DNA of 64,000 nt from IMGVR_UViG_3300032334_002567:317444-381443; one strand, 5' to 3'; positions 1 through 64,000 are shown, counted from the first letter of the stretch. Made by a program: numbers and translations. The notes: generated from the letters alone by a model not told the origin.

Positions 1-181
1 CGACGGCCAGCCTGCAAAGATTGTGGGTTGGAAAGAAAAGTTTCCAATCGTGAGCCAAATCGACGGCCCTCTTGCTTTTGAGTGGTCGTGGGCCGCTGTC
101 AACAGGATCATGTCCGGTGATCGACAGTTCAAGAGCTAGATCATTTGTACCCTATTAAAGCGTTCAACACCCCAACGGAGA

Positions 182-514
182 ATGATCATGGAATACACCG
201 AAGCCCTCAAAGTTCTTGGCAAGCGTGATTCGAAGAAAGTCGGAAACAACACCTACATGATCCGGCTGGGTTCGGACATCGGTATTCGACTTCACAACAC
301 CGTTGTGGTGACCATCCATCCCGACAATACCTACACACTCAATAGCGGTGGATGGCAGACAGTGACAACAAAGGATCGGATCAACCAGTATTCACCGGTT
401 CGTGTGTATCAATCAAAAAGCGTTTGGTATGTCGGTCAAGGCGAGCTGTTTTACGACAACATGAAAGTCGGTGTCGTTTGCGGTGAGCCGCTAGCTTTAG
501 GAATTGTACCCTAG
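182..514 (+). CDS. Hypothetical phage protein (GGWQTVTTKDRIN motif)
   Basis: ORF after leader with GGAG RBS; its stop TAG lies inside the next repeat. Confidence 0.8.
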   Translation: MIMEYTEALKVLGKRDSKKVGNNTYMIRLGSDIGIRLHNTVVVTIHPDNTYTLNSGGWQTVTTKDRINQYSPVRVYQSKSVWYVGQGELFYDNMKVGVVCGEPLALGIVP

Positions 515-553
515 TAGGTTGTGTAACCACCCCCAACGGAGTTGTGAAAAAAC

Positions 554-835
554 ATGATGAACTACAGCGGTTGTAACAGCTGGATCTACATCTACGCCAT
601 CGGTGGCAATTGGAACCCCGGCCCCAGCGGTGACGAGTTCGTGGGCTGTGCCTACGACGCCTCCACTGCCCTCAGCCTGCTCGACTTGGTCGAGTTGAAG
701 GGTGGCTATGCCGTCAGCCTGCACGGTGACAACCTGCATACGCTCAATGCCGTCAGCGGCGAGTGTGGTGTGCGGGAAGCCCGTATCATGTTCAAGCTCT
801 GGAAAGAGAAAGAGGCGGTCGTTGTCGCTGGGTAA
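554..835 (+). CDS. Hypothetical protein, cassette gene
   Basis: ORF fills the space between repeats at 504 and 847; GGAG RBS. Confidence 0.7.
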   Translation: MMNYSGCNSWIYIYAIGGNWNPGPSGDEFVGCAYDASTALSLLDLVELKGGYAVSLHGDNLHTLNAVSGECGVREARIMFKLWKEKEAVVVAG

Positions 836-888
836 CAATAAATAAATTGTACCCTAAAAGAGTGTTCGATCCCAACGGAGAAGCGATC

Positions 889-1032
889 ATGGAAATTAAA
901 TTCAACTTCAAAACACGTCAGTACGACGTTTGCATCACATTCTTCGACGGCAGAACCCCCATAAATGTTTGCTCTTTCTACAAAGAGTCGGATGCTCGCG
1001 CCTACGTCATGGTTCACAATGTCAAGTGTTAG
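889..1032 (+). CDS. Hypothetical 47-aa protein (MEIKFNFK...)
   Basis: ATG 889 follows CCCAACGGAG; restart within track ORF 763..1032. Confidence 0.7.
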   Translation: MEIKFNFKTRQYDVCITFFDGRTPINVCSFYKESDARAYVMVHNVKC

Positions 1033-1091
1033 ATTCAATAAATAAATTGTACCCTGACAGAGTGTTCGATCCACCCCAACGGAGTTTTGAA

Positions 1092-1244
1092 ATGACCGAA
1101 AACGAAATCAATGTTCTGGAAGAGGCCGCATCGCACATTCGAAACGATGCTTACAACTGCGATAGCAGTCTGGATCGCAAGTATTTCGAAAAGCTTGCCG
1201 ATAAGATCGAAGACATTATCGCCAAGCATAATCAAAGCAAATAA
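1092..1244 (+). CDS. Hypothetical 50-aa protein (MTENEINV...)
   Basis: ATG after leader RBS; stop abuts the next repeat. Confidence 0.75.
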   Translation: MTENEINVLEEAASHIRNDAYNCDSSLDRKYFEKLADKIEDIIAKHNQSK

Positions 1245-1293
1245 ATTGTACCCTAGATGATTGTTCGATTCACACCCCAACGGAGAAGCGATC

Positions 1294-1674
1294 ATGGCAA
1301 GCTGGTACACCGTCAGCGAGAGCAAGATTCAGTGGGCTCCCATCGGCACCCGTGTTCTGAAGACTGGCGAGACTAAGCCGAAGTTTTCCCGGATCGGCGT
1401 CCGTATCAATATGGTGGACGGTAGCTGGTGGTTCCACAGCTTCAAGCACGATAGCTGGACGCAACACTATCCCCGGAAGCAGGCCACCGACAAGCTGGGA
1501 CGGCCCATTTTCGAGGATGGTCAGCCGCTCCTGCGACCGGAACGCAAGGAAACCTACCGCAACTGGATGGCGGTTGTGAGAGAGTTCGGCACTCGACTGC
1601 CCGCTCTGGTTGTCGCTCTGGAAAACGGTCACGCCGAAGCTCTGCTAGCCGAAGCAGAGAAAACGGCAGCGTAA
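1294..1674 (+). CDS. Hypothetical protein (MASWYTVS...KTAA)
   Basis: ATG after CCCCAACGGAG; restart within track ORF 1261..1674. Confidence 0.8.
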   Translation: MASWYTVSESKIQWAPIGTRVLKTGETKPKFSRIGVRINMVDGSWWFHSFKHDSWTQHYPRKQATDKLGRPIFEDGQPLLRPERKETYRNWMAVVREFGTRLPALVVALENGHAEALLAEAEKTAA

Positions 1675-1681
1675 AACGTGT

Positions 1682-1738
1682 GCTAGGGGCGGCAAGGCTC
1701 TACGGCCAAAAGCCGCGAAACTGCTAGCCGCCCCTAGC
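1682..1738 (+). other. GC-rich hairpin without U-tract (linker type B)
   Basis: GCTAGGGGCGGC / GCCGCCCCTAGC perfect 12-bp inverted repeat. Confidence 0.8.
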
Positions 1739-1810
1739 CCGTTGGGGTACTTATAAATAATTGTACCCTAAAAGTGTGTTGCGAACGCCCCTCTTTTTCA
1801 AGGATGAAAA

Positions 1811-1981
1811 ATGTACGCTCTGACGATGATCATAGGTTTTCTTGGCTACGGGTTCGGGTACGAGGGTTGTGAAAAAGGAAAGATATATTTCGGCGTGTAT
1901 ACCCCCAAAGCCGAATATGGTTGGGTCATGACAGAAAAAGACGTTTATCTGGATACCGTGTACCAGAAAACTTCTAAATAA
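1811..1981 (+). CDS. Hypothetical 56-aa protein (MYALTMIIGFLGYGFGY...), not in ORF track
   Basis: Manually translated; AAGGA RBS; TAA abuts the repeat at 1983. Confidence 0.65.
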   Translation: MYALTMIIGFLGYGFGYEGCEKGKIYFGVYTPKAEYGWVMTEKDVYLDTVYQKTSK

Positions 1982-2022
1982 ATTGTACCCTAGTTGATTG
2001 TTCGATCCAACCCCAACGGAGA

Positions 2023-2247
2023 ATGACAATGCCAAATATCAACTGGTTCGACGGTCAGAATGCGGTTGGCAAGTACGTTATGGAACTCATGTACGACGAC
2101 GGTAGCGTCAGCTACATGAAAAATGAGAACTACGAGCAGATTTGCCACTACTACCGGCTTGCTTTGGAAATGTCGGAAGTGGTGGGTGCGACCATCTACA
2201 ACCCAAAGTGGCAAGTAGTTTGCTCGACAGCACGGGCCGCAGCGTGA
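2023..2247 (+). CDS. Hypothetical protein ending ARAAA
   Basis: ORF after leader/RBS. Confidence 0.75.
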   Translation: MTMPNINWFDGQNAVGKYVMELMYDDGSVSYMKNENYEQICHYYRLALEMSEVVGATIYNPKWQVVCSTARAAA

Positions 2248-2353
2248 ACACGGTTGCCTGGGCGGGTTGAGACAAAACTCCCCGCCCTGGCCTGTTAGGG
2301 TATTTATATTGTACCCTATAGAAGTGTCAGCCACCCCAAACACAGGAGCCAAT

Positions 2354-2515
2354 ATGAGCAATAACGAAAAACCGTACTGCTTCGAAGAAGCCCGTTTCAA
2401 GCGTGAAATGGAATACGTGGCTCGTAAGCTCAAAGAGGCGTTGGAACTCAAGGAATACGCCAAACAACTGGCAAAAGAAAAAGAACAAAAAGAGAAAGAG
2501 GAAAGCCGGGACTAA
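2354..2515 (+). CDS. Hypothetical 53-aa charged protein (MSNNEKPY...)
   Basis: AGGAG RBS before ATG 2354. Confidence 0.7.
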   Translation: MSNNEKPYCFEEARFKREMEYVARKLKEALELKEYAKQLAKEKEQKEKEESRD

Positions 2516-2535
2516 CACCCCCGGTTCTCTTTTTT
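2504..2535 (+). terminator. Rho-independent terminator (linker type A)
   Basis: GCCGGG..CCCGGT stem followed by TCTCTTTTTT. Confidence 0.7.
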
Positions 2536-2595
2536 AGTCGGCCATAGGGTACAAATAAAATAAAAAGGGATATACAATAATTGTACCCTATAACA

Positions 2596-2713
2596 GTGTG
2601 AATGATTGCGAGGCCGCACCATCGGCACTACTGTCCGGTTGCAAACGGCAGTAACTCGCGGGAGCGGTATGCCGAAAGGCAGCGAGTGGTGCACCCCATC
2701 GCAATCGTTCACA
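2596..2713 (+). ncRNA. Putative structured ncRNA (~118 nt) occupying a cassette slot
   Basis: 15-bp closing stem 2597-2611/2699-2713 (one G-U); inner stems GCACCA/TGGTGC, TACTG/CAGTA, CTCGC/GCGAG and a TGCC-GAAA-GGCA tetraloop hairpin; no RBS; flanked by repeats at 2581 and 2723. Confidence 0.7.
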
Positions 2714-2766
2714 ACAAAACAATTGTACCCTAGAAAAGTGTTCGATTCACCCCAACGGAGACGATC

Positions 2767-3102
2767 ATGACTTTCGTCAACCTGACCCCGCACACGATCA
2801 CTGTGGTTCTCGACAATACCAGCGTGCAATTCCCGGCTTCTGGCAACGTGGCCCGTGTTTCCACCAGTCGAGTCTCTGGCCCCACGCTAACCGTCTACGG
2901 CGATTCTGTCGGTATCCAGACTTCCCGTGTCGAGTTCGGGGCAGTCGAGGGGCTTCCCGATCCCGTGGACGGCACGGTTTACATTGTGAGCGGAATGGTC
3001 GCAGCCCGTGTCAACCGGCCCGACGTTTTCGCTCCCGGTGAACTGGTGCGTGATGCAAACGGCCAGCCCACCGGCTGCAAGGGTCTGACTTGCAGCGGTT
3101 GA
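2767..3102 (+). CDS. NLTPH-motif protein; possible Crn4-like ring nuclease
   Basis: Motifs NLTPH, GLPDP..G..YIVS, RPDV..PG..VRD..G...GC..L. Family link recalled, not searched. Confidence 0.55.
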   Translation: MTFVNLTPHTITVVLDNTSVQFPASGNVARVSTSRVSGPTLTVYGDSVGIQTSRVEFGAVEGLPDPVDGTVYIVSGMVAARVNRPDVFAPGELVRDANGQPTGCKGLTCSG

Positions 3103-3159
3103 TTATTATAATTGTACCCTATAGAAGTGTTCGATCCCAACCCCAACGGAGACTCACGA

Positions 3160-3600
3160 ATGAACGACATTCTTCTCGCCGCCCTGACCAGCTGCTTCAG
3201 CAAGATGGCAAAGGCCGCTGGCCCGATTGCCCCCGGCCTGCACCAGGTCGATGAAACGATCACGATGCGGGTCAAGGGCGAGGTGCTGAAGTCGGACGAC
3301 GAAACCTACGTCCCGACGATTGCGATTCCCGTCAAGGCCGTGATGGCTACGTTGCTCCCCCGGTTGGGTGCGACACGGGAGGCTGCGATGGAAACGCTTA
3401 TCGCCGCCATGACTGAAGCGGTCAATCTGGACAAGCTGGGCGATGAAACGCTCAAAGCCCGGATGAAAGACGTTGACGCGGCTTTCGAGCATGTGCAGAA
3501 CGTGCTCGACGCCCTCCCGCCAAAGACACGGACGGGAAAGACGAACGTGGACGTGACCCTTGTGGTCGCTCCCACGCCCGCCGTCGCACTTGTCCCGTGA
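3160..3600 (+). CDS. Hypothetical 146-aa protein (MNDILLAA...)
   Basis: ATG after CCCCAACGGAG; restart within track ORF 3112..3600. Confidence 0.8.
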   Translation: MNDILLAALTSCFSKMAKAAGPIAPGLHQVDETITMRVKGEVLKSDDETYVPTIAIPVKAVMATLLPRLGATREAAMETLIAAMTEAVNLDKLGDETLKARMKDVDAAFEHVQNVLDALPPKTRTGKTNVDVTLVVAPTPAVALVP

Positions 3601-3612
3601 CGATACGGCATC

Positions 3613-3644
3613 GGGGGCGGGAGGAACTAACAACTCCCGCCCCC
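3613..3644 (+). other. GC-rich hairpin (linker type B)
   Basis: GGGGGCGGGAG / CTCCCGCCCCC perfect 11-bp stem. Confidence 0.8.
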
Positions 3645-3709
3645 ACTAGCCGTTTGTGCAATTGTACCCTATTGGTTTGTGTGATTCGTCCCTTTACTTT
3701 GGAGCAGTT

Positions 3710-3892
3710 ATGGAAGCGAAAATCGAGAACGGCTTTCTGGTTCTGCGAGTCCCGATGAATGCAACGCCGATTCGTTCGTCTACCGGCAAGACTTTGGTGG
3801 TTGCCTCGACCTATGGCAACAAGGCAACCGAAGTGACGGTGGACGGCAAGACGGTCACCGTGGGCGTCAACGCCTATATCAAGGCCGCTTGA
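3710..3892 (+). CDS. Hypothetical 60-aa protein (SSTGKTLVVASTYGN motif), ends KAA
   Basis: GGAG RBS, ATG 3710. Confidence 0.8.
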   Translation: MEAKIENGFLVLRVPMNATPIRSSTGKTLVVASTYGNKATEVTVDGKTVTVGVNAYIKAA

Positions 3893-3913
3893 CCCCAACG
3901 GTTCGGATCGAAA

Positions 3914-3950
3914 GCCGGAGGGGACAGCCACCCCCTCCGGTTCTTTTTTT
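3914..3950 (+). terminator. Rho-independent terminator (linker type A)
   Basis: GCCGGAGGGG / CCCCTCCGGT stem + TCTTTTTTT. Confidence 0.85.
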
Positions 3951-4039
3951 AGCCCGCCATAGGGTACAAATAAATATATAAAATAATTGTACCCTAGATA
4001 AGTGTTCGATCTAACCTTCCCTCTCACTTGGAGTCAACG

Positions 4040-4108
4040 ATGATCGCTCTCGTTCTCGCGTTTGGCCTTGGTTTCGCCGCCATTTCTGCCGTTTACTGGG
4101 TGCTGTAA
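4040..4108 (+). CDS. 22-aa hydrophobic peptide MIALVLAFGLGFAAISAVYWVL
   Basis: Own leader repeat at 3987 and GGAG RBS; manually translated. Confidence 0.55.
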   Translation: MIALVLAFGLGFAAISAVYWVL

Positions 4109-4201
4109 AGCTCCCAGTCTAACACCTGAGTGATTAGGGTATAAAGTAATTGTACCCTAGATAAGTGTTCGATCCGATCCCACCCCAACCGGAGACGCAC
4201 G

Positions 4202-4495
4202 ATGAAGAACGCTTTCGACCGCACGAACAGCATGAAGAACAAGCTCAAGGCCGATTGGAACCGGATGGTGGGGGAACTGGTGTCCATCCCCGCCGGTTGC
4301 CAGATTCACAGCCTGACGCTCACGCAGACCAACTTCGGTTGGGTCTACGCCCGGAAGCACGGCCAGCCCGTGCCGGTCGCCCAGTTGCGGAACGCCGCCG
4401 TGACGAAGGGTTACTGTATCCTGCACGACGGCCCCAACTTCCGGGTGGCCCTCCCGCCGAAGCGGAACGGGGAGCCGGTCAAGGCCGCAGCGTGA
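4202..4495 (+). CDS. Hypothetical protein ending VKAAA
   Basis: ORF after leader/RBS. Confidence 0.8.
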   Translation: MKNAFDRTNSMKNKLKADWNRMVGELVSIPAGCQIHSLTLTQTNFGWVYARKHGQPVPVAQLRNAAVTKGYCILHDGPNFRVALPPKRNGEPVKAAA

Positions 4496-4503
4496 ACACG
4501 GTT

Positions 4504-4538
4504 GCCGGGGCGGGTCGAGACTAACTCCCCGCCCCGGC
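4504..4538 (+). other. GC-rich hairpin (linker type B), near-copy of 2256-2291
   Basis: GCCGGGGCGGG / CCCGCCCCGGC; flanks GGCCGCAGCGTGAACACGGTTGCC and TATTTATATTGTACCCTATAGAAGTGT are shared with 2235-2327. Confidence 0.8.
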
Positions 4539-4611
4539 CCCGTTGGGGTACTTGTATTTATATTGTACCCTATAGAAGTGTTCGATCCCCACCCCCAACC
4601 GGAGCCGCCCC

Positions 4612-5001
4612 ATGTTGAATGAAGCGTTCTTTCAGGTGTGCAACGATGCCGTCCCCGCAAAGTCCAGCTACGTCTCGCTCTACGTCAACGTGCCGTACTA
4701 CGGTGGGCCGGAGGAAGGTGGATGGTGGGGCAGTGACACCGCACTAGTCGCTCACTACAAGTGTGACAGCCAGCCCCATGCCGAAGCTGTGAAGGCCCGT
4801 GTCGAGGAGCTGGCCCAGCAGTTGAGCGACGATGCCCGCCGGTCGTTTGGTCAAGCCTGCAAGGCCCAGTGTGAATGGCTGGACGCACGTGGGTTGGACG
4901 CCGACTACCTGCCCGAAGTGGACGGGGAGGAAACCTACTGGGTCGCCGTCGAGGATCGCCCCGGTGAACACGCCAGCCAAGGGTGCAGGCACTACGAATA
5001 A
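4612..5001 (+). CDS. Hypothetical phage protein (YGGPEEGGWW motif)
   Basis: ORF after leader; stop abuts the repeat at 5004. Confidence 0.8.
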   Translation: MLNEAFFQVCNDAVPAKSSYVSLYVNVPYYGGPEEGGWWGSDTALVAHYKCDSQPHAEAVKARVEELAQQLSDDARRSFGQACKAQCEWLDARGLDADYLPEVDGEETYWVAVEDRPGEHASQGCRHYE

Positions 5002-5025
5002 AATTGTACCCTATCAAGCACACCG

Positions 5026-5060
5026 ACCGGAGGGGACAGCCAACCCTCCGGCTTTCTTTT
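5026..5060 (+). terminator. Rho-independent terminator (linker type A)
   Basis: CCGGAGGG / CCCTCCGG + T-tract; near-copy of 3914-3950. Confidence 0.8.
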
Positions 5061-5255
5061 CAGCCCGCCATTGGGTACAAATAAAGTAATACATAATAAT
5101 TGTACCCTAGTAATATACAGGAGGGTATTACAAAGATAATAATACAGAAATAAAAAGCGAAAACCTTTTAAAAAAATTGTACCCTAGGTACCCTCCCCCC
5201 CGCAATTACTGTCTTATTTTTTAAGTCGTCCTGACTTTTTTTCCCGTATTAGCAC

Positions 5256-5324
5256 CGTTGCAAAATCCCGGTTACAAACGTTGCAAAATCCCGGTTACAA
5301 ACGTTGCAAAATACCAGTTACAAA
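5256..5324. repeat. 3 x 23-bp tandem repeat CGTTGCAAAATCCCGGTTACAAA
   Basis: Two exact copies and one with two mismatches. Confidence 0.9.
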
Positions 5325-5636
5325 ATTTTGGCCCTAGTAATTCTTTATTTTCTCCATATGGGCTTAAGATTTTAATATTGATGACATCTTTAAAAAATCC
5401 AGCCAAAAAATTCCATAAAATTCTATTACAAATTTTGGCCCCAACAATTCTTCGTTCTATGCCGTATAAATAAATTAGGCAAAATGGAGTGCCTCTAAAA
5501 AAATGCGGCACGAAATTTTTAACGAAGGAGTGTTATGGATTATTATTCTATAAGTGGATTGGCAGTAATTACATCAATTATTTGGTTGTTTTGCTATTGT
5601 GTAAAAATAACAATGGACAATAACGAATAGACCCCC

Positions 5637-5664
5637 TAGACAAAACCTACTCTTCTGGTAAGAT
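5637..5664 (+). promoter_or_regulatory. Sigma70-type promoter TAGACA-N16-TAAGAT, extended -10
   Basis: TGG precedes the -10. Confidence 0.45.
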
Positions 5665-5739
5665 GTCCCGTAAGGAGATCACAAAGAAGTTCTCTAGGAG
5701 AAAAAATGAAAGTCAAAAGCAGGTAGTGTTCTTACTAAA

Positions 5740-5922
5740 ATGATAGCAAAACTTATTTTAGCTTTTTTGCTGATTATAACCATTCTTGTTGGTTATAGTT
5801 CTATTCAAGCTGTTGCAGAACCTACAAAAGTAGAGAAAAAAGTAGAAGACAAATCGAAATGTTTTTGTAATGGATTAAGTTTGCCCCAAGAGCGTCAGTG
5901 TCCAACAATGAACGATTTGTGA
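5740..5922 (+). CDS. Small protein with N-terminal signal/TM segment
   Basis: Hydrophobic N-terminus. Confidence 0.5.
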   Translation: MIAKLILAFLLIITILVGYSSIQAVAEPTKVEKKVEDKSKCFCNGLSLPQERQCPTMNDL

Positions 5923-5930
5923 GATTCTTC

Positions 5931-6152
5931 ATGGCATGGAATATCCCAGAAATTAAAAAATGGGCAAAGAACCATAAAATAGAAGTTAAATTAGACAAAG
6001 AGTCTAAAAAATACAGATGGACAATAGATGATAAAGTAAGTGAACTTTTATCTATAGATGATTTAGTCCCTCAGGTATTTAACTTTTTAACGGACAACAA
6101 GTACGTTCAGCATCAGGAAGAATATAGGAACAAAAAAGACACTAAATTATAA
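5931..6152 (+). CDS. Hypothetical protein (MAWNIPE...)
   Basis: Track ORF 5898..6152; ATG 5931 avoids overlap. Confidence 0.55.
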   Translation: MAWNIPEIKKWAKNHKIEVKLDKESKKYRWTIDDKVSELLSIDDLVPQVFNFLTDNKYVQHQEEYRNKKDTKL

Positions 6153-11529: not shown

Positions 11530-12078
11530 ATGGCTGCAACTACAACAATGGGAACCGGTGTTGGTTCTGTGGATAATGTCTATAATAAATTAAAAAATGG
11601 TGTTGTTAATTCATCAAATGTTGTTAACAATTCTTTAAAGTCTGTTGACGTTTTACGTAAGCCACTTTTGGTAACAGCTGATACTTTAACTGTCACGGAA
11701 GATTATGCAGGTAGAGTTGTTTGTTTAGATAGGGCTGCTGGCGTTACTGTTACTTTACCAGCCGCAACTGGAACTGGAAATGTTTACAAGTTTGTTGTTT
11801 CAACAACAGTAACAAGCAACAATGACGTAATCAAAGTTGCCAATGCTGTTGATTCAATGGCAGGTCGTGCATTAGCTTGTGCTGATAGCGGCAACACTGT
11901 CAATGGTTGGGAAGTTGTATCCGGTGATGATACTATCACACTAAACGGTGGAACTAAAGGTGGATATGTTGGCGACACAATTGAAATTATTGATATCAAA
12001 GCCAATCTCTTTTTAGTTAATGCTTACCTAAATCAGACAGCCTCAGAAGCCACTCCATTCAGTGCAACTGTTTCTTGA
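11530..12078 (+). CDS. Probable virion structural/decoration protein
   Basis: AGGAGG RBS; Thr/Val/Gly beta-rich, LDRAAGVTVTLPAATG motif. Confidence 0.55.
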   Translation: MAATTTMGTGVGSVDNVYNKLKNGVVNSSNVVNNSLKSVDVLRKPLLVTADTLTVTEDYAGRVVCLDRAAGVTVTLPAATGTGNVYKFVVSTTVTSNNDVIKVANAVDSMAGRALACADSGNTVNGWEVVSGDDTITLNGGTKGGYVGDTIEIIDIKANLFLVNAYLNQTASEATPFSATVS

Positions 12079-12167: not shown

Positions 12168-12527
12168 ATGAGCAATAATTCTTTTAAATCGTGGTTGAAA
12201 CTATCGGAAGATGGTGGAGGTGCCGGTGGTGGTGGAGGTGCCGGTGGTGGTGGAGGTGCCGGTGGTGGTGCCGGTGGTGGTGGAACTAGTGGTGGTGGAA
12301 CTAGTGGTGGTGGAACTAGTGGTGGTGGAACTAGTGGTGGTGGAACTAGTGGTAGTGGAACTAGTGGTGGTGGAACTAGTGGTGGTGGAACTAGTGGTGG
12401 GCAAAATCCTCCCATGGGCAGTGGAACTGGCAAAGATAATATCGCCAAAGTTCCTACACGTTGGGGATGTTGTGGAATTTGGCCATATTGGAAAAAGAAA
12501 AGAAGAAAAAAGAAAAAAAGTGGATAA
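12168..12527 (+). CDS. Gly-rich low-complexity protein with basic tail
   Basis: FKSWL..SE N-terminus, (GGGTS)8, C-terminal WKKKRRKKKK. Confidence 0.65.
   Translation: MSNNSFKSWLKLSEDGGGAGGGGGAGGGGGAGGGAGGGGTSGGGTSGGGTSGGGTSGGGTSGSGTSGGGTSGGGTSGGQNPPMGSGTGKDNIAKVPTRWGCCGIWPYWKKKRRKKKKSG
12213..12398. repeat. Coding tandem repeats (GGTGGTGGAACTAGT x ~8 and GGTGGAGGTGCC units)
   Basis: Directly visible. Confidence 0.9.
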
Positions 12528-12996
12528 TAAAGAGCTACTGCCTTCCATTCCTGATGATCAAAAAAAGAAGGTATTCTCGTTAATAGAGGAATTTAAGAAT
12601 TTTGCTTTTAAGGGCAACGTTGTTGATCTAGCTGTGGGTATGGTTATTGGGAGTTCTTTTAGTAATATAGTAAACAGTTTAGTCAACAACCTAATTACTC
12701 CGATAATAGGTATAGTTTTACCGGGTGATGTTGGACTTAAAGATTGGCAAATAGTTGTTGGCGAAAAACGAATACCTTTTGGTGCATTCTTTAATGATGT
12801 ATTTGGATTCTTACTCACTGCGACTATTTTGTTCTTATTCTTGAAGAAGTTTTTAGTTTGGTTGTTGAAGTCTAGAAGAGAGGTGGACTTGAACAAACCT
12901 CCTCTAACTAAAGACCAAGAACTATTGCGTCAAAACAACGAAGTACTTAACCAAATAAAAGACATTTTATTGAGAAGTCAAAGTACCGGACTATAG
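12520..12996 (+). CDS. mscL: Large-conductance mechanosensitive channel
   Basis: EEFKNFAFKGNVVDLAVGMVIG, second TM, ELL..IKDIL tail; probable GTG start at 12520. Confidence 0.92.
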   Translation: MDNKELLPSIPDDQKKKVFSLIEEFKNFAFKGNVVDLAVGMVIGSSFSNIVNSLVNNLITPIIGIVLPGDVGLKDWQIVVGEKRIPFGAFFNDVFGFLLTATILFLFLKKFLVWLLKSRREVDLNKPPLTKDQELLRQNNEVLNQIKDILLRSQSTGL

Positions 12997-13889
12997 ACTG
13001 CGGCGTGTTTGACAGCATAGTTAATTACATCTTTTTTAATTTGTCTGATTCTTTCTTTGGATACATCAAAGATTTTGCCAACATCTTGTAGAGTCATGCC
13101 CTCTTCTTGGTCTATTCCAAAGTAATACTTCAAAATAGTAATTTTGGCATCGGCATTTTTCATATTGCTCCTAATAATTTCAAATACTCTTTCAACAACT
13201 TCCCTGTTATGTTTATTTTTTAATTCCACAACAGCAAAATCTTCTTTTTGTTGTTGTAAGGTTTCTGGTTCTTCTATTCCTGTGAATCGTTCTTCTAGCT
13301 TCCTATAGTTTGAGTAATCTCTATGGAGGTTTCTCTTAAGAACATTTACATAATAGGTGGAAAATTTAAAGTTGAGTCTATAATCGAAGTATTCGATAGA
13401 CTTTAACATATGCATGTATGCGTTTGAAAAGAATTCGTCTCTTTGTGGTCCATCTTGTTCAGCAAATTTACTTACTTGCTTGACGATTAATCTCATATTG
13501 GATTTAAGTAGAATGTTTCTTACTTCTTGTAGTTTGTTAATGGTATCCTCTATTTCTAAGAGGCTTTTCTCTCTAAGTCTTTCCAACTTCACGGGGGGAG
13601 ATTGCTTAGGAGATTTGTTGTCTTTTGGTTTCTCAAATCCTGTGGTTAGTTTTTTAAGTCTATATTTCAAGTAATTGTATTTGCGAAAAAGGTGGTATTC
13701 TTGTTCTTTCTTCAACAGGGGAGAACAGTTTAGAATGTTGTTATGATCGACTTTGTCATAGCAAAGATTAACATCTGCCAATAATGGCTTTCTGTTGTTG
13801 CCCTCAAAAGATTTCTCGAAGAAAAATCTATCAGGAATGCATGAAATAATCTTTTCAAGTCTTTCATTCTTGGTCATGCTTATCTCCAT
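12978..13889 (-). CDS. RNA polymerase sigma-70 family factor
   Basis: PLL..EQE, SNMRLI, FDYRLNFKFSTY, TLQDVGKIFDVSKERIRQI. Confidence 0.9.
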   Translation of the reverse strand: MEISMTKNERLEKIISCIPDRFFFEKSFEGNNRKPLLADVNLCYDKVDHNNILNCSPLLKKEQEYHLFRKYNYLKYRLKKLTTGFEKPKDNKSPKQSPPVKLERLREKSLLEIEDTINKLQEVRNILLKSNMRLIVKQVSKFAEQDGPQRDEFFSNAYMHMLKSIEYFDYRLNFKFSTYYVNVLKRNLHRDYSNYRKLEERFTGIEEPETLQQQKEDFAVVELKNKHNREVVERVFEIIRSNMKNADAKITILKYYFGIDQEEGMTLQDVGKIFDVSKERIRQIKKDVINYAVKHAAVYSPVL

Positions 13890-30580: not shown

Positions 30581-33500
30581 ATGCCAGAATTATACGACAA
30601 CCTAGGAAGAAAAATAGATGCTGCCAAAATGAGCATTGGCGAGCTAAAGGGTTTAGTCGGCACATTGATGAAGTCTAAAGTTGGACCAGCAAAACCTATT
30701 GGTGGTCAAGAAGAAGAAGCTAAAACACAAGACTCAAATCTAGAACTTATTAAATTATTTGAAGACTATGTAAAAGGATTTAACGAAGAAGTAGATGAAC
30801 AAAAGAGTTTACTTCAAAATATAGTAGATGCATTAAAAAATATTAATTCTAAAAAAGAAGAAAAAGCTAATCAACCAAAAGACAACAAAGAAGAAAAAGA
30901 TGAGATAAAAGAAACATTTCCAGAAAAATTAAGAAAAGCTCTTACTGGAAAAAACAAGCCTAGCAAAGAAGAGCATACAACTGCTAAGGCTACAAATTCT
31001 TTAGCAAATCTATTCGGGAAAAAAGGTTCTGGCTATACCCATGATATACACTGTGAGGCATGGCTAAGACAAATATATCAGGTTTTAGCTAAAGATAGAG
31101 AAGGCGTAGCAACGCCAGAAGCCGCTGCTAGGCAGGTTGAAGAAGATGTAACAAGAGTCACAGCAAGAGAACCTGCAGAAACAGCTGCAAGGGAAGCTTC
31201 TGAGGCAGCTACTACTGGAGGGGGCGAGACTATAAGAGCGAGAGATTGGCTAGATGCCGAAGAGTACTACCAAGAGTTAAACGGATTAGAAAATGATTAC
31301 TATCAACACACAGTAGATTCAATATTTGGACTATGGAACAAAGAAAAAGATTTATACGAAAGAATAACAGGCTTAGAAAAAGAAAAAAATGCAATTCACC
31401 GTGCTTATTTGAAGGAAGGCATCAGCAAAGAGGAAAAAGAAAGACTAGCTTTAGCTTACAGGCAAATGGGCATAGAAATAAGCAATCAAAAAATCATAAA
31501 AAGAAATTTAAAAGAACAAGAGAACGCTTGGAAAGAGATTGGAAAACAAATAGAGACAGCAGAAAAATATTTATTAGGTTTCAAAGGAGGCGGGGCGTTT
31601 GAGGTACTAACAAAAGGAATAATAAAAGAAGAAAGAGAATTTACACAAAATATTAGACAAGCGGCATATGAAACTGCTGGAGTCACTTCTGAGTCTAAGG
31701 CCCTGCAAAAAACATACGAAGAGATAGGCAAAACTTCTAAACTAACCGGAATGAATAGGAGTGAAACTCAAAAAGCTTATACAAAAGCATTAAGGTCAGG
31801 TGTCAAAGATCAAAAGAAAGCACTTAGTCTATCAGTATCACAACTAAACACAGAAAAACAAATAGGTGCCACAGCAGATTCTTTAGGTGAATTCTTCATA
31901 GAAATGGGCACCCAACTTCAGTTCAACAATGATCAAATGTCAGAGGTTGGAAGAGGCATAAGAGAAGCTGGTCGAAACACTGGTTTGGTAGGAGATAAAT
32001 TAGCTGGCGTTGTCAGGGGCAGTGCAGAATTTGTAAAAATGATGAAAAATGCTGGTACTGCGTCTGCATCTGCCGTGAGTAATATTGTTGGTTTACAAGC
32101 AGAGTTTACAAAGACAGGCGTAGAAGGAGGAAAGCTTCTTAAAGGACTAAGCAGTACATCTGGATTCTTAGGTAGTGATGCACAAACATTGGCTTTGATT
32201 GCTAATGCTGCTAACAGAGTTGGTCTTACTCAAGAAATGATTAATGGAACAATACTAAAAAGTTCAGCTAGCATTAAAAAGTTTAACAGAGGCTTGACTC
32301 AAACTGTCAATGACATGGGATTGGGTGGTAGAAACGCCGAAGAAATGCGAGCAAACTTTGACAAATTGTCAGATGAAGGCAGAAGAGATATCAATTTAAG
32401 ACTCAACGCAGCTTTTGGGATGGAAGCCGGTGAGTTAATGTTAGCAATAGAAGGAATCGAAAATCAATCTAAATCACTTTCTGATCGTTTGGGAGAACTT
32501 AATAAAAAGAAATCTCAAAACTTAACATTAGAAGAAAAAGCTACATTGCTTGAAGAAGAAAGAAGCTTGAAACTTGGTGCAGCAACAAAAGCTCTGACTG
32601 CAATATCTGAGGCCGCTAAGGGCACAAAAGACATGAACGAGGCCTTAGCAAAATTTAGCAGTAGAAGATCCGAATTTGAAGGCGACATGAAGGCACTCGG
32701 ACAATCCTGGACAACCGAGACAGATGTTGCTAGGGGAGCTATAAAAAGTGCTTTAGAAAATGTAAATGCTGGCTTGAAAAAAGCAGGAAAGAAAGAACTA
32801 AAAATAGACTCGTCGGAAATAGAAAAAGCAATAAAAGACCCAGCAGCATTCAGAGAACTAACGTCTCAAATAACTAAGGGAGAGCAAGAATTAGCTACTG
32901 CACAAAAAGCACAATTAGACCCATTGAGTGCAATAGAACAAAAGTTAACTGAAATAAACGACTCTGTGAGAAACTTGAGCCAAAGTTTGATATCGGGTAT
33001 TTTTAATAGTTTTCTAGGAAAAATGCTTGTGGGGATAACAGCTTTAGGAGCTTTAATTGTAGGTGCCATAGGTGGATTGAATTCAATAATCATGCCTATT
33101 TGGAACTTAATGACTCTTTTAGGAAGATCTTTATCCGGTATGGGACAAAGAACATCACAGGATAGAATGGGAAGTCTTGGGAAGGTATGGGATCGCTTAA
33201 CTGGGCGTGATACAACCCCAACCCCAGAAAGATTAACAGAAGCAGAAGTAACAGCTACCGGTAAAGATAAAACTATAACTAAAACTGGTTGCTGCGAGGA
33301 TCTTGTAAGTATAAACAAAGCAATGTTGGATGTTTTAAATGCCATTAAAGATTGTGTTTGTGGCAAACAACCAGAAGCTTCTACTCAAGCAAGTCAAACA
33401 AAACAGGAGTTAAGAGAAGCGGAACTAACACCCAAATCAGTAGTATCACCAGATCAAGTTGCAGCTGGTAAAGCAGGAGAAGTTGCCAAAAAAGAAGTAG

Positions 33501-36500
33501 GAACAGACTTAGCTTCTAAATCAGTAGTTTCACAGCCACCACAAACTACTCCAGAAAAAATAGAAGAAGCTGTTAAAAAAGAAAGTAGGAAACCAAAGTT
33601 ATCTCCTGAGGAGATTGCCACAAGAAAAGCAGCTGGACAGGCAGCTAAAGAGAGATCACAAACAGCCGGTATAAGTCCTTCAGTAGCAAAGTCCATAAAG
33701 AGACAAGAAGTCAAAAATATAAAAATGGATGCTTCATTAAACAAAATGCAAAGAAGGAATATAATTCAAGAATTGCAGAACGGAAAAAAAACAAAGACAA
33801 TGATCCTAAGAGAGCAGGAAGCTGCTAAAGGACCAAAGCCCTTAGAAGTACCCCAGCCACCAGATACAGGAAATTTTGATTTAAATAAATTAATTGCAAG
33901 TGGTCAAGATATGGCAAAGAGTGCTGCTGCTGTTGCCCTACTTGGTTTAGGAGTTGTTGCTCTAGGTGCAGCAATAGTGTTCTTGTCCAAGAAAATATTG
34001 AGTGGGTTCAACTTAGACACTTCAACAATACTACAAACAGCTGGTGCTATAGCTGCACTTGCGGTAGCAGGTGGTGCGATTGCTGCTGCTGGTATTGTGG
34101 CATATGAGGCACTAAATAAGAAAGAAAATAAAGAATTTGTAGATACTGCTCCAAAAAGTAAAACCGAAATGCTAAAGCAAATAGCAGCAATGATGCTATT
34201 GGGGCCAGCTCTTGTACTATTAGGTGCAGCTATAGTCAAGATGTCCCAAATGGTTATAGACGCTTTTGGACTTGATTTAAATACGGTTGCAATGGTTGCC
34301 GGAACAGTAGCTGCAATTGTAGCTGCTGCTGGAGCCTTGACTCTAGGTGCTTCAGAGGCTCTTGAAGGTTTTGAGAAACTAGAGGGCAATAAGCTTATAA
34401 AAAATCCTGGTAAACTTGTTAGTGCGATGGCTAAGGGAGCATTAGCTCTATTGATCGTTGGTCCGGGACTAGTTGCACTTTCTGCCGCAATAATCAAGAT
34501 GTGTCAAGGTATATTAAGCTATGCAGAAATAGATCTAAACACAATCAAAACTGTAACTGGACAAGTAGCCGCACTTCTCGCTGGCACTGGTGCAATAGCA
34601 TTAGGTATAACAGCGGCTGCTGGAGGATTAATACTATTAGGTAAATTCGCAGACTTTGCCAAGAGCTATGCTAAAGACATGATAATAGGAGCGGCAGCAC
34701 TAATACTTATTGGTCCTGCAGTTGTAGCCCTTGCAGCAGGTCTAAATTATATAATTAATCAAATTTTATCTGCAACAGGTGTGGACGCAGCAAAAGCAGC
34801 AAAAACAGCGTGGAATGTAGCTGGTTTGATTGCGGCCACAGCTGTAATTGCTCTTGCGGTTATGGGTGCGATGGCGGGCTTAACAGCTTTAGGTGCACTT
34901 GCTACTGCCATGACAGGACCACAAATTGGATTCATGCTTTATGGTGCTGCTGCATTATTATTGTTAGCTCCATTAGTTACCGGACTAGCTGCGGCTGTTT
35001 TATATTTAACCAAGTCTTTCATGGGTGGGTTTGACGCAAAACAAGCAACCAAAGTGGCATACGATCTATCTGCAGTTTTAATGTCTGCCTCTGTTATAGC
35101 CATAGCTGTAATGGCGGCCATGGCTGGACTGGGTGGTTTAGGAGTTCTTGCAGCTGGTTTACCTGCTTACATACCTGCTATGTTGGGTGGTGCAGCAGCT
35201 CTAATGCTGCTTACCCCGGTAATGACAGCTTTGGCAACTTCAGTAATAGGAATGACAGAATCCATAATGGATGGAATTGATGCTAAACACGCAGCTAAAG
35301 TTGCATATGATTTGGGGTCAATAATAATGTCTGCTGGCTCAATTGCTCTTGGGATCATGGGAGCCATGGCAGCTCTAACAGGATTAGGATTATTGGCAGG
35401 TGCTTATATTGGATTTATAGGACCAATGATTGGCGGTGCTCTGGCATTGAGTGTAATGACACCGGCTGTTGTAACCCTTGCTGGCTCCATTATATCGATG
35501 TCTGAATCTTTAATGAAAAATATGGTTAGCCCAGATGCTGCAAAGAAAACAGTTGAAAGCTTAAATTCTATTCTTGATAGTGCTGGCAATATAGCTGTGT
35601 CAATTATAGCCAACGCAGCTTCTCTGGCTCTTTTGGGAACAATGTTTGGTGTTTCTTTAGTAGCTATACCATTTATGAAGCTAGGCACTATGGCTTTGTC
35701 TAATCTAACACCTAGTATAGCAAATTTTGTAAACACTATTGTTAATATGGCAAAACAATTTTCTACTTTAGTGTCTCCAAAAGAAGCTGTAAGCCTCTCT
35801 AAAGACGTCGCCGCTATAATGGGAGCGGTTGGAGATATAAGTGAACAAATATTCAAAATTAAAGATAAAATGCTTTCTGTGCCTGTTTATGGAAGCGTTT
35901 GGAATGCAATAAGAGGTGTAAAAGTAGCCGATTATATGAATAGTGGGGTCAAAGCTCTGAAAGAATTAGCTGCTCCTGTTCAAGATTATGTTGCTGCCAT
36001 AAAAGATTTTGCACTTAATGTTGGAAGAACAGTTAATCCAAGAAATGCTGCTGAAATGGCGAGAGGCGTTGCCGCAATACTTTGTGCTGTTAGCAATGTA
36101 ACTTCTAATATGATGACTGCTAAAGACGGTATACTTTCTATTCCTAAAAATGGAGGAATTTTTGCGACTTTAACACGCACAAGAATTTCAGATTACCTTA
36201 ATGCTGGCGTTGGTTCTTTGCAAGAAATGGCCGCACCAATTAAACGATATGTAGCAGCAGTGAAAAAATTTGCAAGTGAAATTGGATTTGATCCTAGACA
36301 AGCTGCTGAGATGGCTAGCGGTGTGGCAGCGATACTTTGTGCTGTTGGTAAGGTTACTTCTAACATAATGACTGCTAAAGATGGAATAATGAGCATACCA
36401 GACAACGGTGGAATATTTGCTTGGATGCTAGGTGCTCAGTTATCCCAAAGAATGAACAAAGGCGTCGAAGCACTTAAAGTACTTGGAAAACCAATACAAA

Positions 36501-63700: not shown

Positions 63701-64000
63701 ATATCGCCCATCAATATACCACCGATAACAATACCACCTATATCGCCCATCAACATACCACCGATAACAATACCGCCAATACCACCAATAACACCCATAA
63801 ACATACCACCGATAACAATACCACCTATATCGCCCATCAATATACCACCGATAACAATACCACCTATATCGCCCATCAACATACCACCAATAACTGTTCC
63901 ACCAATAAACGTACCACCAATAACTGTACCACCAATAAACATACCACCTGTAGAGATACCGCCCGTAACTATACCACCAATATCGCCTATTAATGTACCA
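60713..64000 (+). CDS. Virion protein with PKD-like domain and long Pro/Ile-rich repeats; truncated by window end, not in ORF track
   Basis: AAGGA RBS, GTG 60713 (MVNFFPPKPVYP...), LDFGDG; the same frame is used at 62162 and 63962. Confidence 0.8.
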   Translation, partial: MVNFFPPKPVYPKSYDSDYTLYLVYNTSETFISKKNNAWAEEIEIIPVGPKNPEIWANNGFASISGELFYYDSVEKNLPISPEVELKIGLIEVDAKGAITSIPVVDGGSGYYFPSFDVAGTGSGAVIQPVVVDGSITEIIILNGGTGYTFNSVELILVGKVFKLKRCARNLGGSATKNNQIGSEVRGFVVAEHHNQIVDVIINIEKFIGQNFDADYDTLDWRIRHLEGLPIVFDDFTCPDIQFNFYIESEDPAKGVIARYDIVITGSYNNFRLDFGDGNFTTSSVSGTHTYATGSTIDPTVVLSNSKCTIVQTPIERAASTEPENPTVATTFEIPIPQIPNIPDFVPPTVPTPPTPQIPPIVFPCLDIGPVGPVNISPLSPINIPPVTIPPVNVPPITIPPINITPINVSPINLPPISLPPTNIPPVNISPVNITPVNIPPVTIPPINIPPISPINIPPIPPVSPLSPINIPPISPINVPPIYIPPVTIPPVTIPPVTIPPVTIPPVTIPPVTIPPVTIPPVTIPPIPPISPLSPINIPPISPLSPINIPPIPPLSPINIPPISPLSPINIPPVTIPPVNIPPITIPPITIPPISPINIPPIPPVNIPPVNITPVNVPPVNIPPVNITPVNIPPINIPPVNITPVNIPPVNITPVNIPPVNITPVNIPPVNITPVNIPPVNIPPVNITPINIPPVNITPVNIPPVNITPINIPPVNITPVNIPPVNIPPINIPPINIPPIPPVSPINIPPISPLSPINIPPISPVNIPPVNITPIDIPPINIPPVNIPPIPPVSPINIPPISPLSPINIPPIPPLSPINIPPVNITPITPINIPPINVPPITIPPVYIEISPITPAYLTPIDLSPINIPPVSPINIPPIPPVSPINIPPISPINIPPVSPINIPPISPVNIPPVSPINIPPITIPPVSPINIPPITIPPINVPPITIPPVYISPITPAYLTPIDLSPINIPPISPINIPPIPPITPINIPPITIPPISPINIPPITIPPISPINIPPITIPPIPPITPINIPPITIPPISPINIPPITIPPISPINIPPITVPPINVPPITVPPINIPPVEIPPVTIPPISPINVP
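61710..64000 (+). repeat. Degenerate 15-nt coding repeats (IPPVT/IPPVN/ITPVN/ISPIN)
   Basis: ATACCACCTGT(A/G)A(C/A)T units directly visible. Confidence 0.95.

What the first reader, a model, noticed from the sequence alone, without database searches (positions are those of the whole stretch)
121..5200. Array of ~16 single-gene cassettes, each headed by the same non-sigma70 leader: candidate shufflable early/anti-defence module
Seen: 18 direct copies of TTGTACCCT. In 15 of them it is followed at an invariant 6-nt spacing by (G/T)(T/C)GT, then typically TCGAT..CCCCAACGGAG and an ATG. Unrelated 22-146-aa ORFs fill the gaps almost exactly, and several stops abut or overlap the next repeat (514, 1244, 1981, 5001). 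There is no TATAAT at sigma70 spacing, and I did not notice the motif in the remaining 59 kb. Known analogues: PeSL promoter/stem-loop cassettes that shuffle genes in T4-type phages, and integron cassette arrays. Inference: each unit is a self-contained expression cassette, with a promoter for a phage RNAP or alternative sigma and a start at the GTGT. The repeats could also serve as recombination points for gaining, losing or reordering host-takeover genes. This is the best candidate for an undescribed system in the window.
Basis: partly seen in the sequence, partly recalled or inferred. Interest (0 to 1): 0.9.

Follow-up and report, generated by a model that had tools for sequence, protein, structure and literature searches.

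The report
Shuffling promoter-headed gene cassettes, huge phage
The repeats are real: they are most likely the phage's own promoters, each driving one small gene, at the end of a 50-kb block of a giant phage genome, and related phages have swapped, gained and lost genes exactly at these repeats, as in a mechanism known from T4-type phages.

Summary
Window 1-5200 is the promoter-dense 3' end of a 50.6-kb block in which all genes run one way. The block lies in a phage contig of at least 381 kb and carries 72 exact + strand copies of TTGTACCCT (0.15 expected).

The conserved element is A-W4-AATTGTACCCTA, then N6, then TGT, with no -35 element. It precedes about 50 start codons by roughly 45 nt. 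It also precedes a tRNA gene and a structured non-coding RNA, and it restarts expression after hairpin/T-run terminators. It therefore behaves as a promoter, not a translation signal. What reads it is unresolved: two sigma-70-family genes were found, and no phage RNA polymerase in the roughly 150 kb examined.

Two divergent lake-metagenome lineages carry the same core in dense arrays. Only 17 of 57 array genes are shared with one of them, the order is partly scrambled, and orientation never changes. Between strains 85-99% identical, 6 of 9 homology breakpoints fall in the core/leader zone (p = 0.0015).

Cassette genes have GC3 of 0.5-0.9 against 0.25 in the backbone, which is unexplained. There is no evidence for early timing or anti-defence function.

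Closest known: PeSL cassettes of T4-type phages. I class this as a new variant of that kind.

The parts
1..5194 (+). 3' terminal 5.2 kb of a 50.6-kb array. The array runs from 45,428 bases upstream of window position 1 to position 5185, which is contig Ga0335335_10478751 about 272,015-322,637.
   Evidence: the window is the last 64,000 bases of the 381,443-bp contig. The array holds 72 + strand copies and 4 inverted copies. Array GC is 45% against 33-36% in the flanks.
138..514 (+). Cassette 1: core at 145-153, ORF 188-514 (108 aa, Kyano_Gp96-like, family F10).
   Evidence: (PF23790, 4e-6).
497..835 (+). Cassette 2: core at 504-512, overlapping the stop codon of cassette 1. ORF 554-835 (93 aa, family F18).
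840..1032 (+). Cassette 3: core at 847-855, leader GTGTTCGAT..CCCAACGGAG, ORF 890-1032 (47 aa).
1040..1244 (+). Cassette 4: core at 1047-1055 (followed by G, not A), ORF 1092-1244 (50 aa).
1239..1738 (+). Cassette 5: core at 1246-1254, ORF 1294-1674 (126 aa, family F11), then a GC-rich hairpin at about 1682-1738 and a partial inverted core.
1754..1981 (+). Cassette 6: core at 1761-1769, ORF 1811-1981 (56 aa).
1976..2310 (+). Cassette 7: core at 1983-1991, ORF 2029-2247 (72 aa, family F12). It ends in a 76-nt 3' module (2235-2310) that it shares with cassette 14.
   Evidence: repeat D8, 82% identity.
2302..2554 (+). Cassette 8: core at 2309-2317, ORF 2354-2515 (53 aa), hairpin plus T-run terminator at 2506-2535, inverted core at 2546-2554.
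   Evidence: repeat D7.
2574..2722 (+). Cassette 9: core at 2581-2589 driving a structured non-coding RNA of about 120-130 nt (about 2597-2715), with no ORF.
   Evidence: minimum free energy -60.7 kcal/mol, z = -6.4, 0 of 200 shuffles as good; no Rfam match.
2716..3102 (+). Cassette 10: core at 2723-2731, ORF 2767-3102 (111 aa, family F5).
   Evidence: phrog_21731, 7e-18, unknown function.
3105..3643 (+). Cassette 11: core at 3112-3120, ORF 3160-3600 (146 aa, family F19), GC-rich hairpin at about 3612-3643.
3655..3969 (+). Cassette 12: core at 3662-3670, ORF 3710-3892 (60 aa), intrinsic terminator at 3913-3950, inverted core at 3961-3969.
   Evidence: (repeats D7, D11).
3980..4144 (+). Cassette 13: core at 3987-3995, ORF 4040-4108 (22 aa, hydrophobic), one-mismatch inverted core at 4136-4144.
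4143..4558 (+). Cassette 14: core at 4150-4158, ORF 4202-4495 (97 aa, GC3 0.90), 3' module at 4483-4558.
   Evidence: (repeat D8).
4556..5001 (+). Cassette 15: core at 4563-4571, ORF 4612-5001 (129 aa). Full-length homologues at 50-53% identity occur in Mycobacterium and Gordonia phages.
   Evidence: phrog_24642, 7e-42, unknown function.
4997..5080 (+). Unit 16: core at 5004-5012 running straight into a hairpin/T-run terminator (5027-5061), with no gene. A one-mismatch inverted core lies at 5072-5080.
   Evidence: repeats D7, D11.
5093..5260 (+). Units 17 and 18 plus the array-end element: cores at 5100 and 5177, about 70 nt of AT-rich spacer, then ATTACTGTCTTnTTTTTTA. GC drops sharply after this point.
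   Evidence: this non-coding end aligns at 76% mean column identity over about 260 nt with the array end of phage 2 (L140).
5249..5324 (.). Three tandem 23-bp repeats just past the array end. Whether they belong to the array is uncertain.
   Evidence: repeat D10.
12978..13889 (-). Sigma-70-family gene (sigma1), a candidate reader of the element. Its own upstream region has TTGTCA-N16-TATAAT with TG at the extended -10 position.
   Evidence: TIGR02937, 61.7 bits, cut-off 42.9. The link to the element is inference only.

Best explanation
The element A-W4-AATTGTACCCTA is a phage-specific promoter. It has a single conserved block and no -35 element. Transcription most likely starts at the conserved G, 17 nt after the first T of the core. 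In the distal third of the block the promoter is joined to a standard C/A-rich leader ending in GGAG, so each small gene is an independent transcription and translation unit. Hairpin terminators, often followed by an inverted copy of the core, close some units.

Because the same 12-45 bp recur every 200-500 bp in one orientation, they also act as portable homology. Recombination between copies deletes, duplicates, inserts and re-orders cassettes without ever inverting them.

Shown: the anatomy, the strict conservation across three lineages, and junctions at the element. Inferred: promoter activity, the start site, and who reads it. Recombination by ordinary homologous exchange is also inferred.
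For: - Copy number and orientation: 72 + strand copies against 4 inverted, over 50.6 kb.
- Position: the core starts 20-80 nt (mode 42-48) before 49 of about 100 + strand start codons.
- Non-protein units: in phage 2 a copy sits 23 nt before the 5' end of tRNA-Glu, which forms its own cassette. In the window a copy heads a structured ncRNA whose first helix starts at position 16-17.
- Restart after terminators: copies follow hairpin/T-run terminators.
- Flank and start context: A/T-rich 7-nt upstream flank and Y-G-T at positions 16-18, in this phage and in the relatives.
- Another genome region: an isolated copy heads an operon after sigma2 and is kept in a relative 88-92% identical in DNA.
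- Possible readers: two sigma-70-family genes are present, one with a host-type promoter. A phage sigma that reads a single element 6-8 bp upstream of the start is known (phiEco32 gp36; PMC8948821).
- Recombination: shared families appear in a different order. Only 17 of 57 phage-2 array ORFs have a homologue here, with order correlation rho 0.77 and 7 of 16 adjacent pairs out of order. UvdE and ligase are swapped in order. Junctions at the core or leader are seen base by base. Six of 9 breakpoints fall in a zone covering 17.6% of the sequence, p = 0.0015. Non-homologous genes share 3' modules and leaders (repeats D8, D12, D13).
Against: - There are no transcript 5' ends and no read-level data.
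- No RNA polymerase gene was found in the roughly 150 kb examined.
- Both sigma factors have region 4, yet no -35 element exists.
- Orthologues of sigma1 (47-51% identity) occur in more distant relatives that lack the element. Sigma2 has homologues on many other large contigs, which were not checked for the element. So neither sigma factor is tied to the element.
- The near absence of degenerate copies is unusual for sigma-type promoters.
- The relatives with re-ordered cassettes are 35-80% identical in protein, so the rate of shuffling is unknown.
- In a tightly packed array most intergenic DNA is core or leader, which inflates the coincidence of junctions with the element. The binomial test allows for this only in part.
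Confidence: 0.68

Rival explanations
1. The element works at the RNA level. The block is transcribed as long RNAs, and UUGUACCCUA marks a cleavage or processing site, or a translational operator, that yields monocistronic mRNAs with a standard leader.
For: The conserved leader ends in GGAG. Where an inverted core lies upstream, a read-through RNA would form a 10-11-bp hairpin (z = -1.9 to -4.7).
Against: Copies follow strong intrinsic terminators, so transcription has to restart there. One copy heads a tRNA with only 13 nt between the core and the tRNA 5' end. The 7-nt A/T flank upstream is a DNA-type feature. Only about 10 of 72 copies have the inverted partner.
Confidence: 0.1
2. The copies are sites for a dedicated site-specific recombinase, in the manner of an integron or an IS110-type system, and expression is a secondary matter.
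For: The core is conserved in an all-or-none fashion. Junctions lie at the core. Inverted pairs of cores resemble imperfect palindromic sites. A 303-aa protein with an IS110 C-terminal-like domain is encoded inside the array.
Against: No tyrosine or serine recombinase appears in the window or array annotations. Several junctions lie in the leader near GGAG, not at a fixed point in the core, as expected for homologous exchange. Every copy is positioned for expression. The 303-aa protein showed no Pfam hit to a nuclease domain.
Confidence: 0.08
3. The core is the operator of a DNA-binding regulator (repressor or activator) that coordinates the block. The true promoter determinants are the flanking A/T-rich tract and a weak -10-like TAnnnT.
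For: TACCCT fits TAnnnT. Inverted pairs could bind a dimer. T4 MotA-type activator boxes are a precedent (PMC4122927, describes PmSLs).
Against: Most copies are single half-sites. No separate conserved -10 or -35 element lies at a fixed distance. This rival overlaps with the main explanation, because the element would still define the promoter.
Confidence: 0.1
4. The GC-rich block is an assembly chimera, or a foreign element recently inserted into an AT-rich phage.
For: GC is 45-58% against 33% in the backbone, and GC3 is 0.5-0.9 against 0.25. One cassette has homologues in actinophages.
Against: The same junction occurs in three assemblies from different samples. Phage 2 shows the same sharp drop (0.59 to 0.26) at a homologous array end. 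The block contains RuvB-like, UvdE and ligase genes whose orthologues sit next to sigma1 in AT-rich relatives. High GC3 is shared by orthologous cassettes in three lineages.
Confidence: 0.03

Closest known systems
PeSL / PmSL composite promoter-terminator cassettes of T4-type phages (Arbiol 2010, PMC2839356; Comeau 2014, PMC4122927)
   Same: An A/T-rich tract, promoter, Shine-Dalgarno sequence and ATG head small ORFans in a hyperplastic region. A stem-loop lies just upstream in some units. Copies are densely clustered: eight PeSLs in about 5 kb in RB49, and a plastic region of about 60 kb in nt-1/KVP40. Insertions, deletions, replacements and displacements between relatives have junctions in the element.
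   Different: The promoter here is not sigma-70-like and not MotA-type. It is a single invariant 12-17-bp block. Seventy-two nearly identical copies cover a 50-kb block with genes in one orientation only. tRNA and ncRNA units are included. The stem-loop next to the promoter is an inverted copy of the promoter core itself. The cassettes differ sharply from the backbone in GC3. Mini-circles were not tested.
Arrays of phage-polymerase promoters in T7-type phages (own knowledge: T7, T3 and SP6 promoters of about 23 bp)
   Same: A contiguous conserved block with an A/T-rich upstream part. Copies are near-identical and all co-oriented. They sit before small genes and are separated by hairpin terminators. 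Some copies read CCCTATAGAAG, resembling the SP6 sequence.
   Different: No single-subunit RNA polymerase gene was found in the roughly 150 kb examined. The bases immediately after CCCTA are variable, and the conserved G lies 7-8 nt further downstream. The genome is a huge myovirus-type phage.
Single-element promoters of phage-encoded sigma factors (phiEco32 gp36, tAATGTAtA; PMC8948821)
   Same: One highly conserved element, no -35 element, and a start 6-8 bp downstream. The phage encodes sigma-70-family proteins.
   Different: gp36 lacks region 4, whereas both sigma factors here have it. phiEco32 has six such promoters; this phage has 72. No link between either sigma factor and the element was shown.
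Integron cassette arrays
   Same: Co-oriented single-gene cassettes of unrelated content, bounded by a repeated element, with turnover at the boundaries.
   Different: Each cassette has its own promoter at its 5' end. There is no attC-type site and no integrase, and the junctions are spread through the repeat.
Host-takeover module of Bacillus phage SPO1 (own knowledge; not checked in a paper here)
   Same: A block of many small genes, with densely spaced strong promoters, strong ribosome sites and terminators.
   Different: The SPO1 promoters are host sigma-A type. The block lies in the terminal redundancy, and no shuffling role has been described.

Membership tests
PeSL (T4-type promoter-early stem-loop) | Sigma-70-like -35/N17/-10 early promoter (or a Mot box plus -10 for PmSL) | tested here: not met
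   No -35 or -10 pair. Positions -45 to -9 carry no information.
PeSL (T4-type promoter-early stem-loop) | Stem-loop just upstream of the promoter, acting as terminator of the preceding unit | tested here: inconclusive
   Present at a minority of units: three hairpin/T-run terminators and four GC-rich hairpins in the window, and about 10 of 72 copies with an inverted core. Many units abut directly.
PeSL (T4-type promoter-early stem-loop) | A/T-rich tract upstream, with Shine-Dalgarno and start codon at the 3' end of the element | tested here: met
PeSL (T4-type promoter-early stem-loop) | Clustered between small variable ORFs, with indels and replacements between relatives that have junctions in the element | tested here: met
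PeSL (T4-type promoter-early stem-loop) | Excised mini-circles detectable during infection | not testable with these tools
   Needs reads or inverse PCR (method in PMC2839356).
T7-type single-subunit RNA polymerase promoter | A cognate single-subunit RNA polymerase is encoded by the phage | tested here: inconclusive
   None in the window, the array, L133 or L134. About 230 kb of the contig was not seen.
T7-type single-subunit RNA polymerase promoter | Contiguous conservation of about 20 bp running up to the start base | tested here: inconclusive
   A 17-nt block is conserved, but the next 6 nt vary and the conserved G lies beyond them.
Phage sigma single-element promoter | The phage encodes a sigma-70-family factor | tested here: met
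   Sigma1 at window 12978-13889 and sigma2 at L134:7649-8527 both pass the TIGR02937 cut-off.
Phage sigma single-element promoter | The factor and the element occur together across relatives | tested here: not met
   Sigma1 orthologues at 47-51% identity lie in loci without the element. Sigma2 has homologues on many other large contigs, not checked for the element.
Integron | intI tyrosine recombinase with attI next to the array | tested here: not met
   No integrase domain in the flanks or the array.
Integron | Promoterless cassettes with an attC site at the 3' end, expressed from one common promoter | tested here: not met
   Every unit carries the element at its 5' end.

The most novel reading that the evidence does not exclude
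A clade of huge freshwater phages runs a gene-capture platform. A self-propagating promoter-leader module, read by a factor specific to the clade, recruits genes from a foreign, GC-rich pool; one cassette has actinophage homologues. The captured genes stay GC-rich (GC3 0.5-0.9 against 0.25) over long divergence. This would come either from recombination-linked biased gene conversion or from selection, for example to escape silencing or nucleases that target AT-rich DNA. GC rises with promoter density in two lineages (rho 0.49 and 0.69).
Probability: 0.25. Interest if true: 0.8.

Novelty: new variant of a known kind. Interest (0 to 1): 0.6.

Why it matters
If the element is a promoter, it is a ready-made, very strict specificity. 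Seventy-two near-identical sites would define a new polymerase or sigma recognition sequence in uncultured huge phages, whose transcription programmes are almost unknown.

The comparisons extend promoter-mediated modular shuffling beyond T4-type phages and beyond host-type promoters. They give base-level junctions that can be tested in read data.

The large and conserved GC3 gap between cassettes and backbone inside one genome is an unexplained pattern. It could bear on how accessory genes enter phage genomes and persist there.

Tried and rejected
- Rfam on window 1-6000 and on the conserved 61-nt element gave nothing meaningful.
It was useful only for fetching pieces of the same contig.
- The single hits in Pontibacter (L146) and in UViG 3300035698_006185 (L158) lie in coding sequence or are unrelated, so they are chance.
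- Test of sigma/element co-occurrence: the search for related loci found only the phage itself. Homologues from the protein search led to more distant phages with a sigma1 orthologue but no element and no other repeated motif. This argues neither for nor clearly against sigma1.
- ClpP homologues sit on short contigs with no array.
- The 4404-aa ORF was checked as a possible injected polymerase. It has no Pfam, PHROG or PDB match.
- The 739-aa protein upstream of the array has no match either.
- Structure predictions of two cassette proteins were too poor to search with (pLDDT 47.7 and 36.8).
- No dispersed repeat exists in the AT-rich part that could serve to fetch the rest of the genome.
- Walking the remaining roughly 230 kb of the contig was not possible within the look-up cap.

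Full report
**1. What the window is.**
The window is identical to the last 64,000 bases of JGI contig Ga0335335_10478751 (381,443 bp; window position 1 = contig position 317,444). The same sequence occurs in a 145,911-bp contig from another JGI sample and in a 224-kb ENA scaffold, at 99.9-100% identity.

Beyond position 5200 the window is AT-rich (30-40% GC). It encodes myovirus baseplate and tail proteins, ClpP, glycosyltransferases, an MscL fusion, a sigma-70-family protein and a 4404-aa ORF. The nearest GenBank phage is an uncultured 595-kb phage, at 35% protein identity in a baseplate protein. This is therefore an uncultured huge phage.

**2. The observation.**
- There are 18 exact + strand copies of TTGTACCCT in 145-5185 and none elsewhere in the window.
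- Fifteen have (G/T)(T/C)GT after 6 nt, and 12 have GGAG and an ATG 42-53 nt after the core start.
- Stop codons abut or overlap the next copy.

Four inverted copies (two exact, two with one mismatch) sit just after hairpins.

**3. The true extent.**
I fetched the contig piecewise and joined overlapping pieces. The window segment turns out to be the 3' end of a 50.6-kb block, running from 45,428 bases upstream of window position 1 to position 5185.
- It holds 72 + strand copies and 4 inverted copies, against an expectation of about 0.15 + strand copies.
- Median spacing is 422 nt.
- There are about 100 + strand ORFs with a median length of 97 aa.
- No copy occurs in the 9.4 kb upstream of the block or in the 59 kb downstream.
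- Density rises from 1-2 copies to 7-9 copies per 2.5 kb towards the 3' end.

The block also holds larger genes: a RuvB-like AAA protein, MoxR/CbbQ ATPases, VWA and DUF2201 proteins, DNA ligase and UvdE. It carries five tRNA genes as well. One further copy lies elsewhere in the genome, after a second sigma gene, at the head of an operon. That copy is conserved in a relative 88-92% identical in DNA.

**4. Anatomy of the element.**
Across the 73 copies that could be aligned, the consensus is A-W-W-W-W-A-A-TTGTACCCT-A, then six purine/A-T-rich bases with few C, then T-G-T. Nothing is conserved from -45 to -9. Seventy-two copies from the relatives give the same picture, with TATA after CCC and Y-G-T at positions 16-18.

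Conservation is all-or-none. The 10-mer has 68 exact copies, 4 copies with one mismatch (all at the last base), and two-mismatch copies at background level.

In the distal roughly 13 kb, and in the relatives, a longer leader follows: (G/T)TGTTCGAT, a C/A-rich stretch, then CCCCAACGGAG.

**5. Why I read it as a promoter.**
- It follows canonical hairpin/T-run terminators, so transcription must restart there.
- In phage 2 a copy lies 23 nt before the 5' end of tRNA-Glu, which forms a cassette of its own between two copies.
- In the window a copy heads a 133-nt RNA with a very stable fold (z = -6.4) whose first helix begins at position 16-17.
- The element has an A/T-rich upstream flank and a pyrimidine-G-T at the inferred start.

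These points exclude a purely translational signal and make an RNA-processing site unlikely. The start at the G 17 nt after the first T is an inference, not a measurement.

**6. Who reads it.**
It is not a sigma-70 promoter. The AT-rich part of the window does carry host-type promoters, including a near-consensus one before the phage sigma gene.

Two sigma-70-family genes exist, 30% identical to each other. A phage sigma that reads one conserved element with a start 6-8 bp downstream is known. However, both sigma factors here have region 4. Orthologues of sigma1 occur in more distant relatives that have the RuvB-like/UvdE/ligase block but neither the element nor elevated GC. Sigma2 has homologues on many other large contigs, which I did not check for the element.

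The contiguous block and its strictness resemble single-subunit polymerase promoters. No polymerase gene was seen in about 150 kb, and about 230 kb could not be reached.

**7. Relatives and shuffling.**
One metagenome scan found arrays with the same core in lake metagenomes. Phage 2 was joined from L150, L130 and L140: 24 kb with 40 copies. Phage 3 is represented by three strains (L129, L123, L126).

Only 17 of the 57 phage-2 array ORFs have a homologue in this array, at 35-80% identity. Their order is only partly colinear (rho 0.77; 7 of 16 adjacent pairs out of order), and UvdE and ligase are swapped in order. Orientation never changes.

Between strains 85-99% identical the junctions can be read base by base.
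- L126 and L129 match through the hairpin, the inverted core, the core and the leader up to GGAG. Different genes follow.
- L129 carries two extra cassettes between two leaders, relative to L126.
- L123 and L129 diverge right after TTGTACCCTATAG at one site. At another, L123 has a 100-nt non-coding insert flanked by core copies.

Six of nine internal breakpoints fall in the zone from -15 to +50 around a core. That zone covers 17.6% of the sequence (p = 0.0015).

Within this window, non-homologous genes share a 76-nt 3' module and near-identical leaders. Unit 16 is a core fused directly to a terminator, which looks like an empty site. These patterns match what was described for PeSLs.

**8. Composition.**
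Cassette genes have GC3 of 0.5-0.9, against 0.25 for backbone genes. Orthologous cassettes are GC3-rich in all three lineages.

In phage 2, GC falls from 0.59 to 0.26 at an array end that is homologous to this one in its non-coding DNA. Chimerism and recent import are therefore unlikely explanations. GC correlates with copy density. I have no tested explanation for this.

**9. Function of the cassettes.**
There is no informative Pfam or PHROG hit. One protein has full-length homologues in Mycobacterium and Gordonia phages. Nothing supports or excludes anti-defence roles or early timing.

**10. Verdict.**
This is a real and striking feature. It is best described as a PeSL-like system built on a phage-specific promoter and operating across a 50-kb block of a huge phage clade. 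The mechanism class is known. The promoter type, the scale, the inclusion of RNA genes and the compositional contrast are new.

Noticed in passing
window 2581-2722: A copy of the element drives a 133-nt non-coding RNA with a very stable fold (-60.7 kcal/mol, z = -6.4). It has no Rfam match, and no homologue was found in the relatives.
   Followed up: partly
L135 about 11625-11685 (about 6.76 kb upstream of window position 1); L130 8144-8204; L123: A 61-nt non-coding element is 96.7% identical between lineages whose genes are about 70% identical. It lies in a 5' leader here and next to tRNA-Val in phage 2. It has no Rfam match, and its fold is no better than shuffled sequence.
   Followed up: partly
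L038 5461-6372 and 6590-6700 (about 40 kb upstream of the window): A 303-aa protein inside the array matches a PHROG 'transposase' family (2e-34). By sequence it also matches PDB chains named IS110 C-terminal domain protein and TasH. Two hairpins that share the stem TTGACGTAAGT/ACTTACGTCAA follow the gene. This may be an RNA-guided system.
   Followed up: partly
L053 1286-1359, 1574-1644, 4395-4466, 10858-10943; L135 11508-11592: Five tRNA genes (Glu-UUC, Gln-UUG, Arg-UCU, Leu-UAA, Leu-CAA) lie on the + strand inside the GC-rich array. Most of them read A/U-ending codons, which suit the AT-rich backbone genes.
   Followed up: partly
window 5249-5324: Three tandem 23-bp repeats (GTTGCAAAATCCCGGTTACAAAC) lie directly after the array end. 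They resemble iterons. A Logan contig begins within them.
   Followed up: no
window 12274-12400: A 15-bp coding tandem repeat (8-9 units) lies in the N-terminal part of an MscL-fusion gene. The JGI and ENA assemblies differ by one gap of 15 bp (one unit length), whose position was not mapped.
   Followed up: no
window 30581-43795: A 4404-aa ORF just upstream of the baseplate genes has no Pfam, PHROG or PDB sequence match.
   Followed up: partly
window 1-5200 against 5200-64000; L140: GC3 is 0.5-0.9 in cassette genes against 0.25 in backbone genes. The contrast is conserved in three lineages and correlates with the density of the element. It is unexplained.
   Followed up: partly
L153 3729-3992; L154 1540-1797: More distant relatives encode an 85-87-aa protein with an RNA polymerase alpha C-terminal domain, next to ClpX.
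   Followed up: no
window 61645-63942, - strand: A run of - strand ORFs with repetitive GGTGGTAT-type sequence and strongly negative GC skew lies at the contig end.
   Followed up: no
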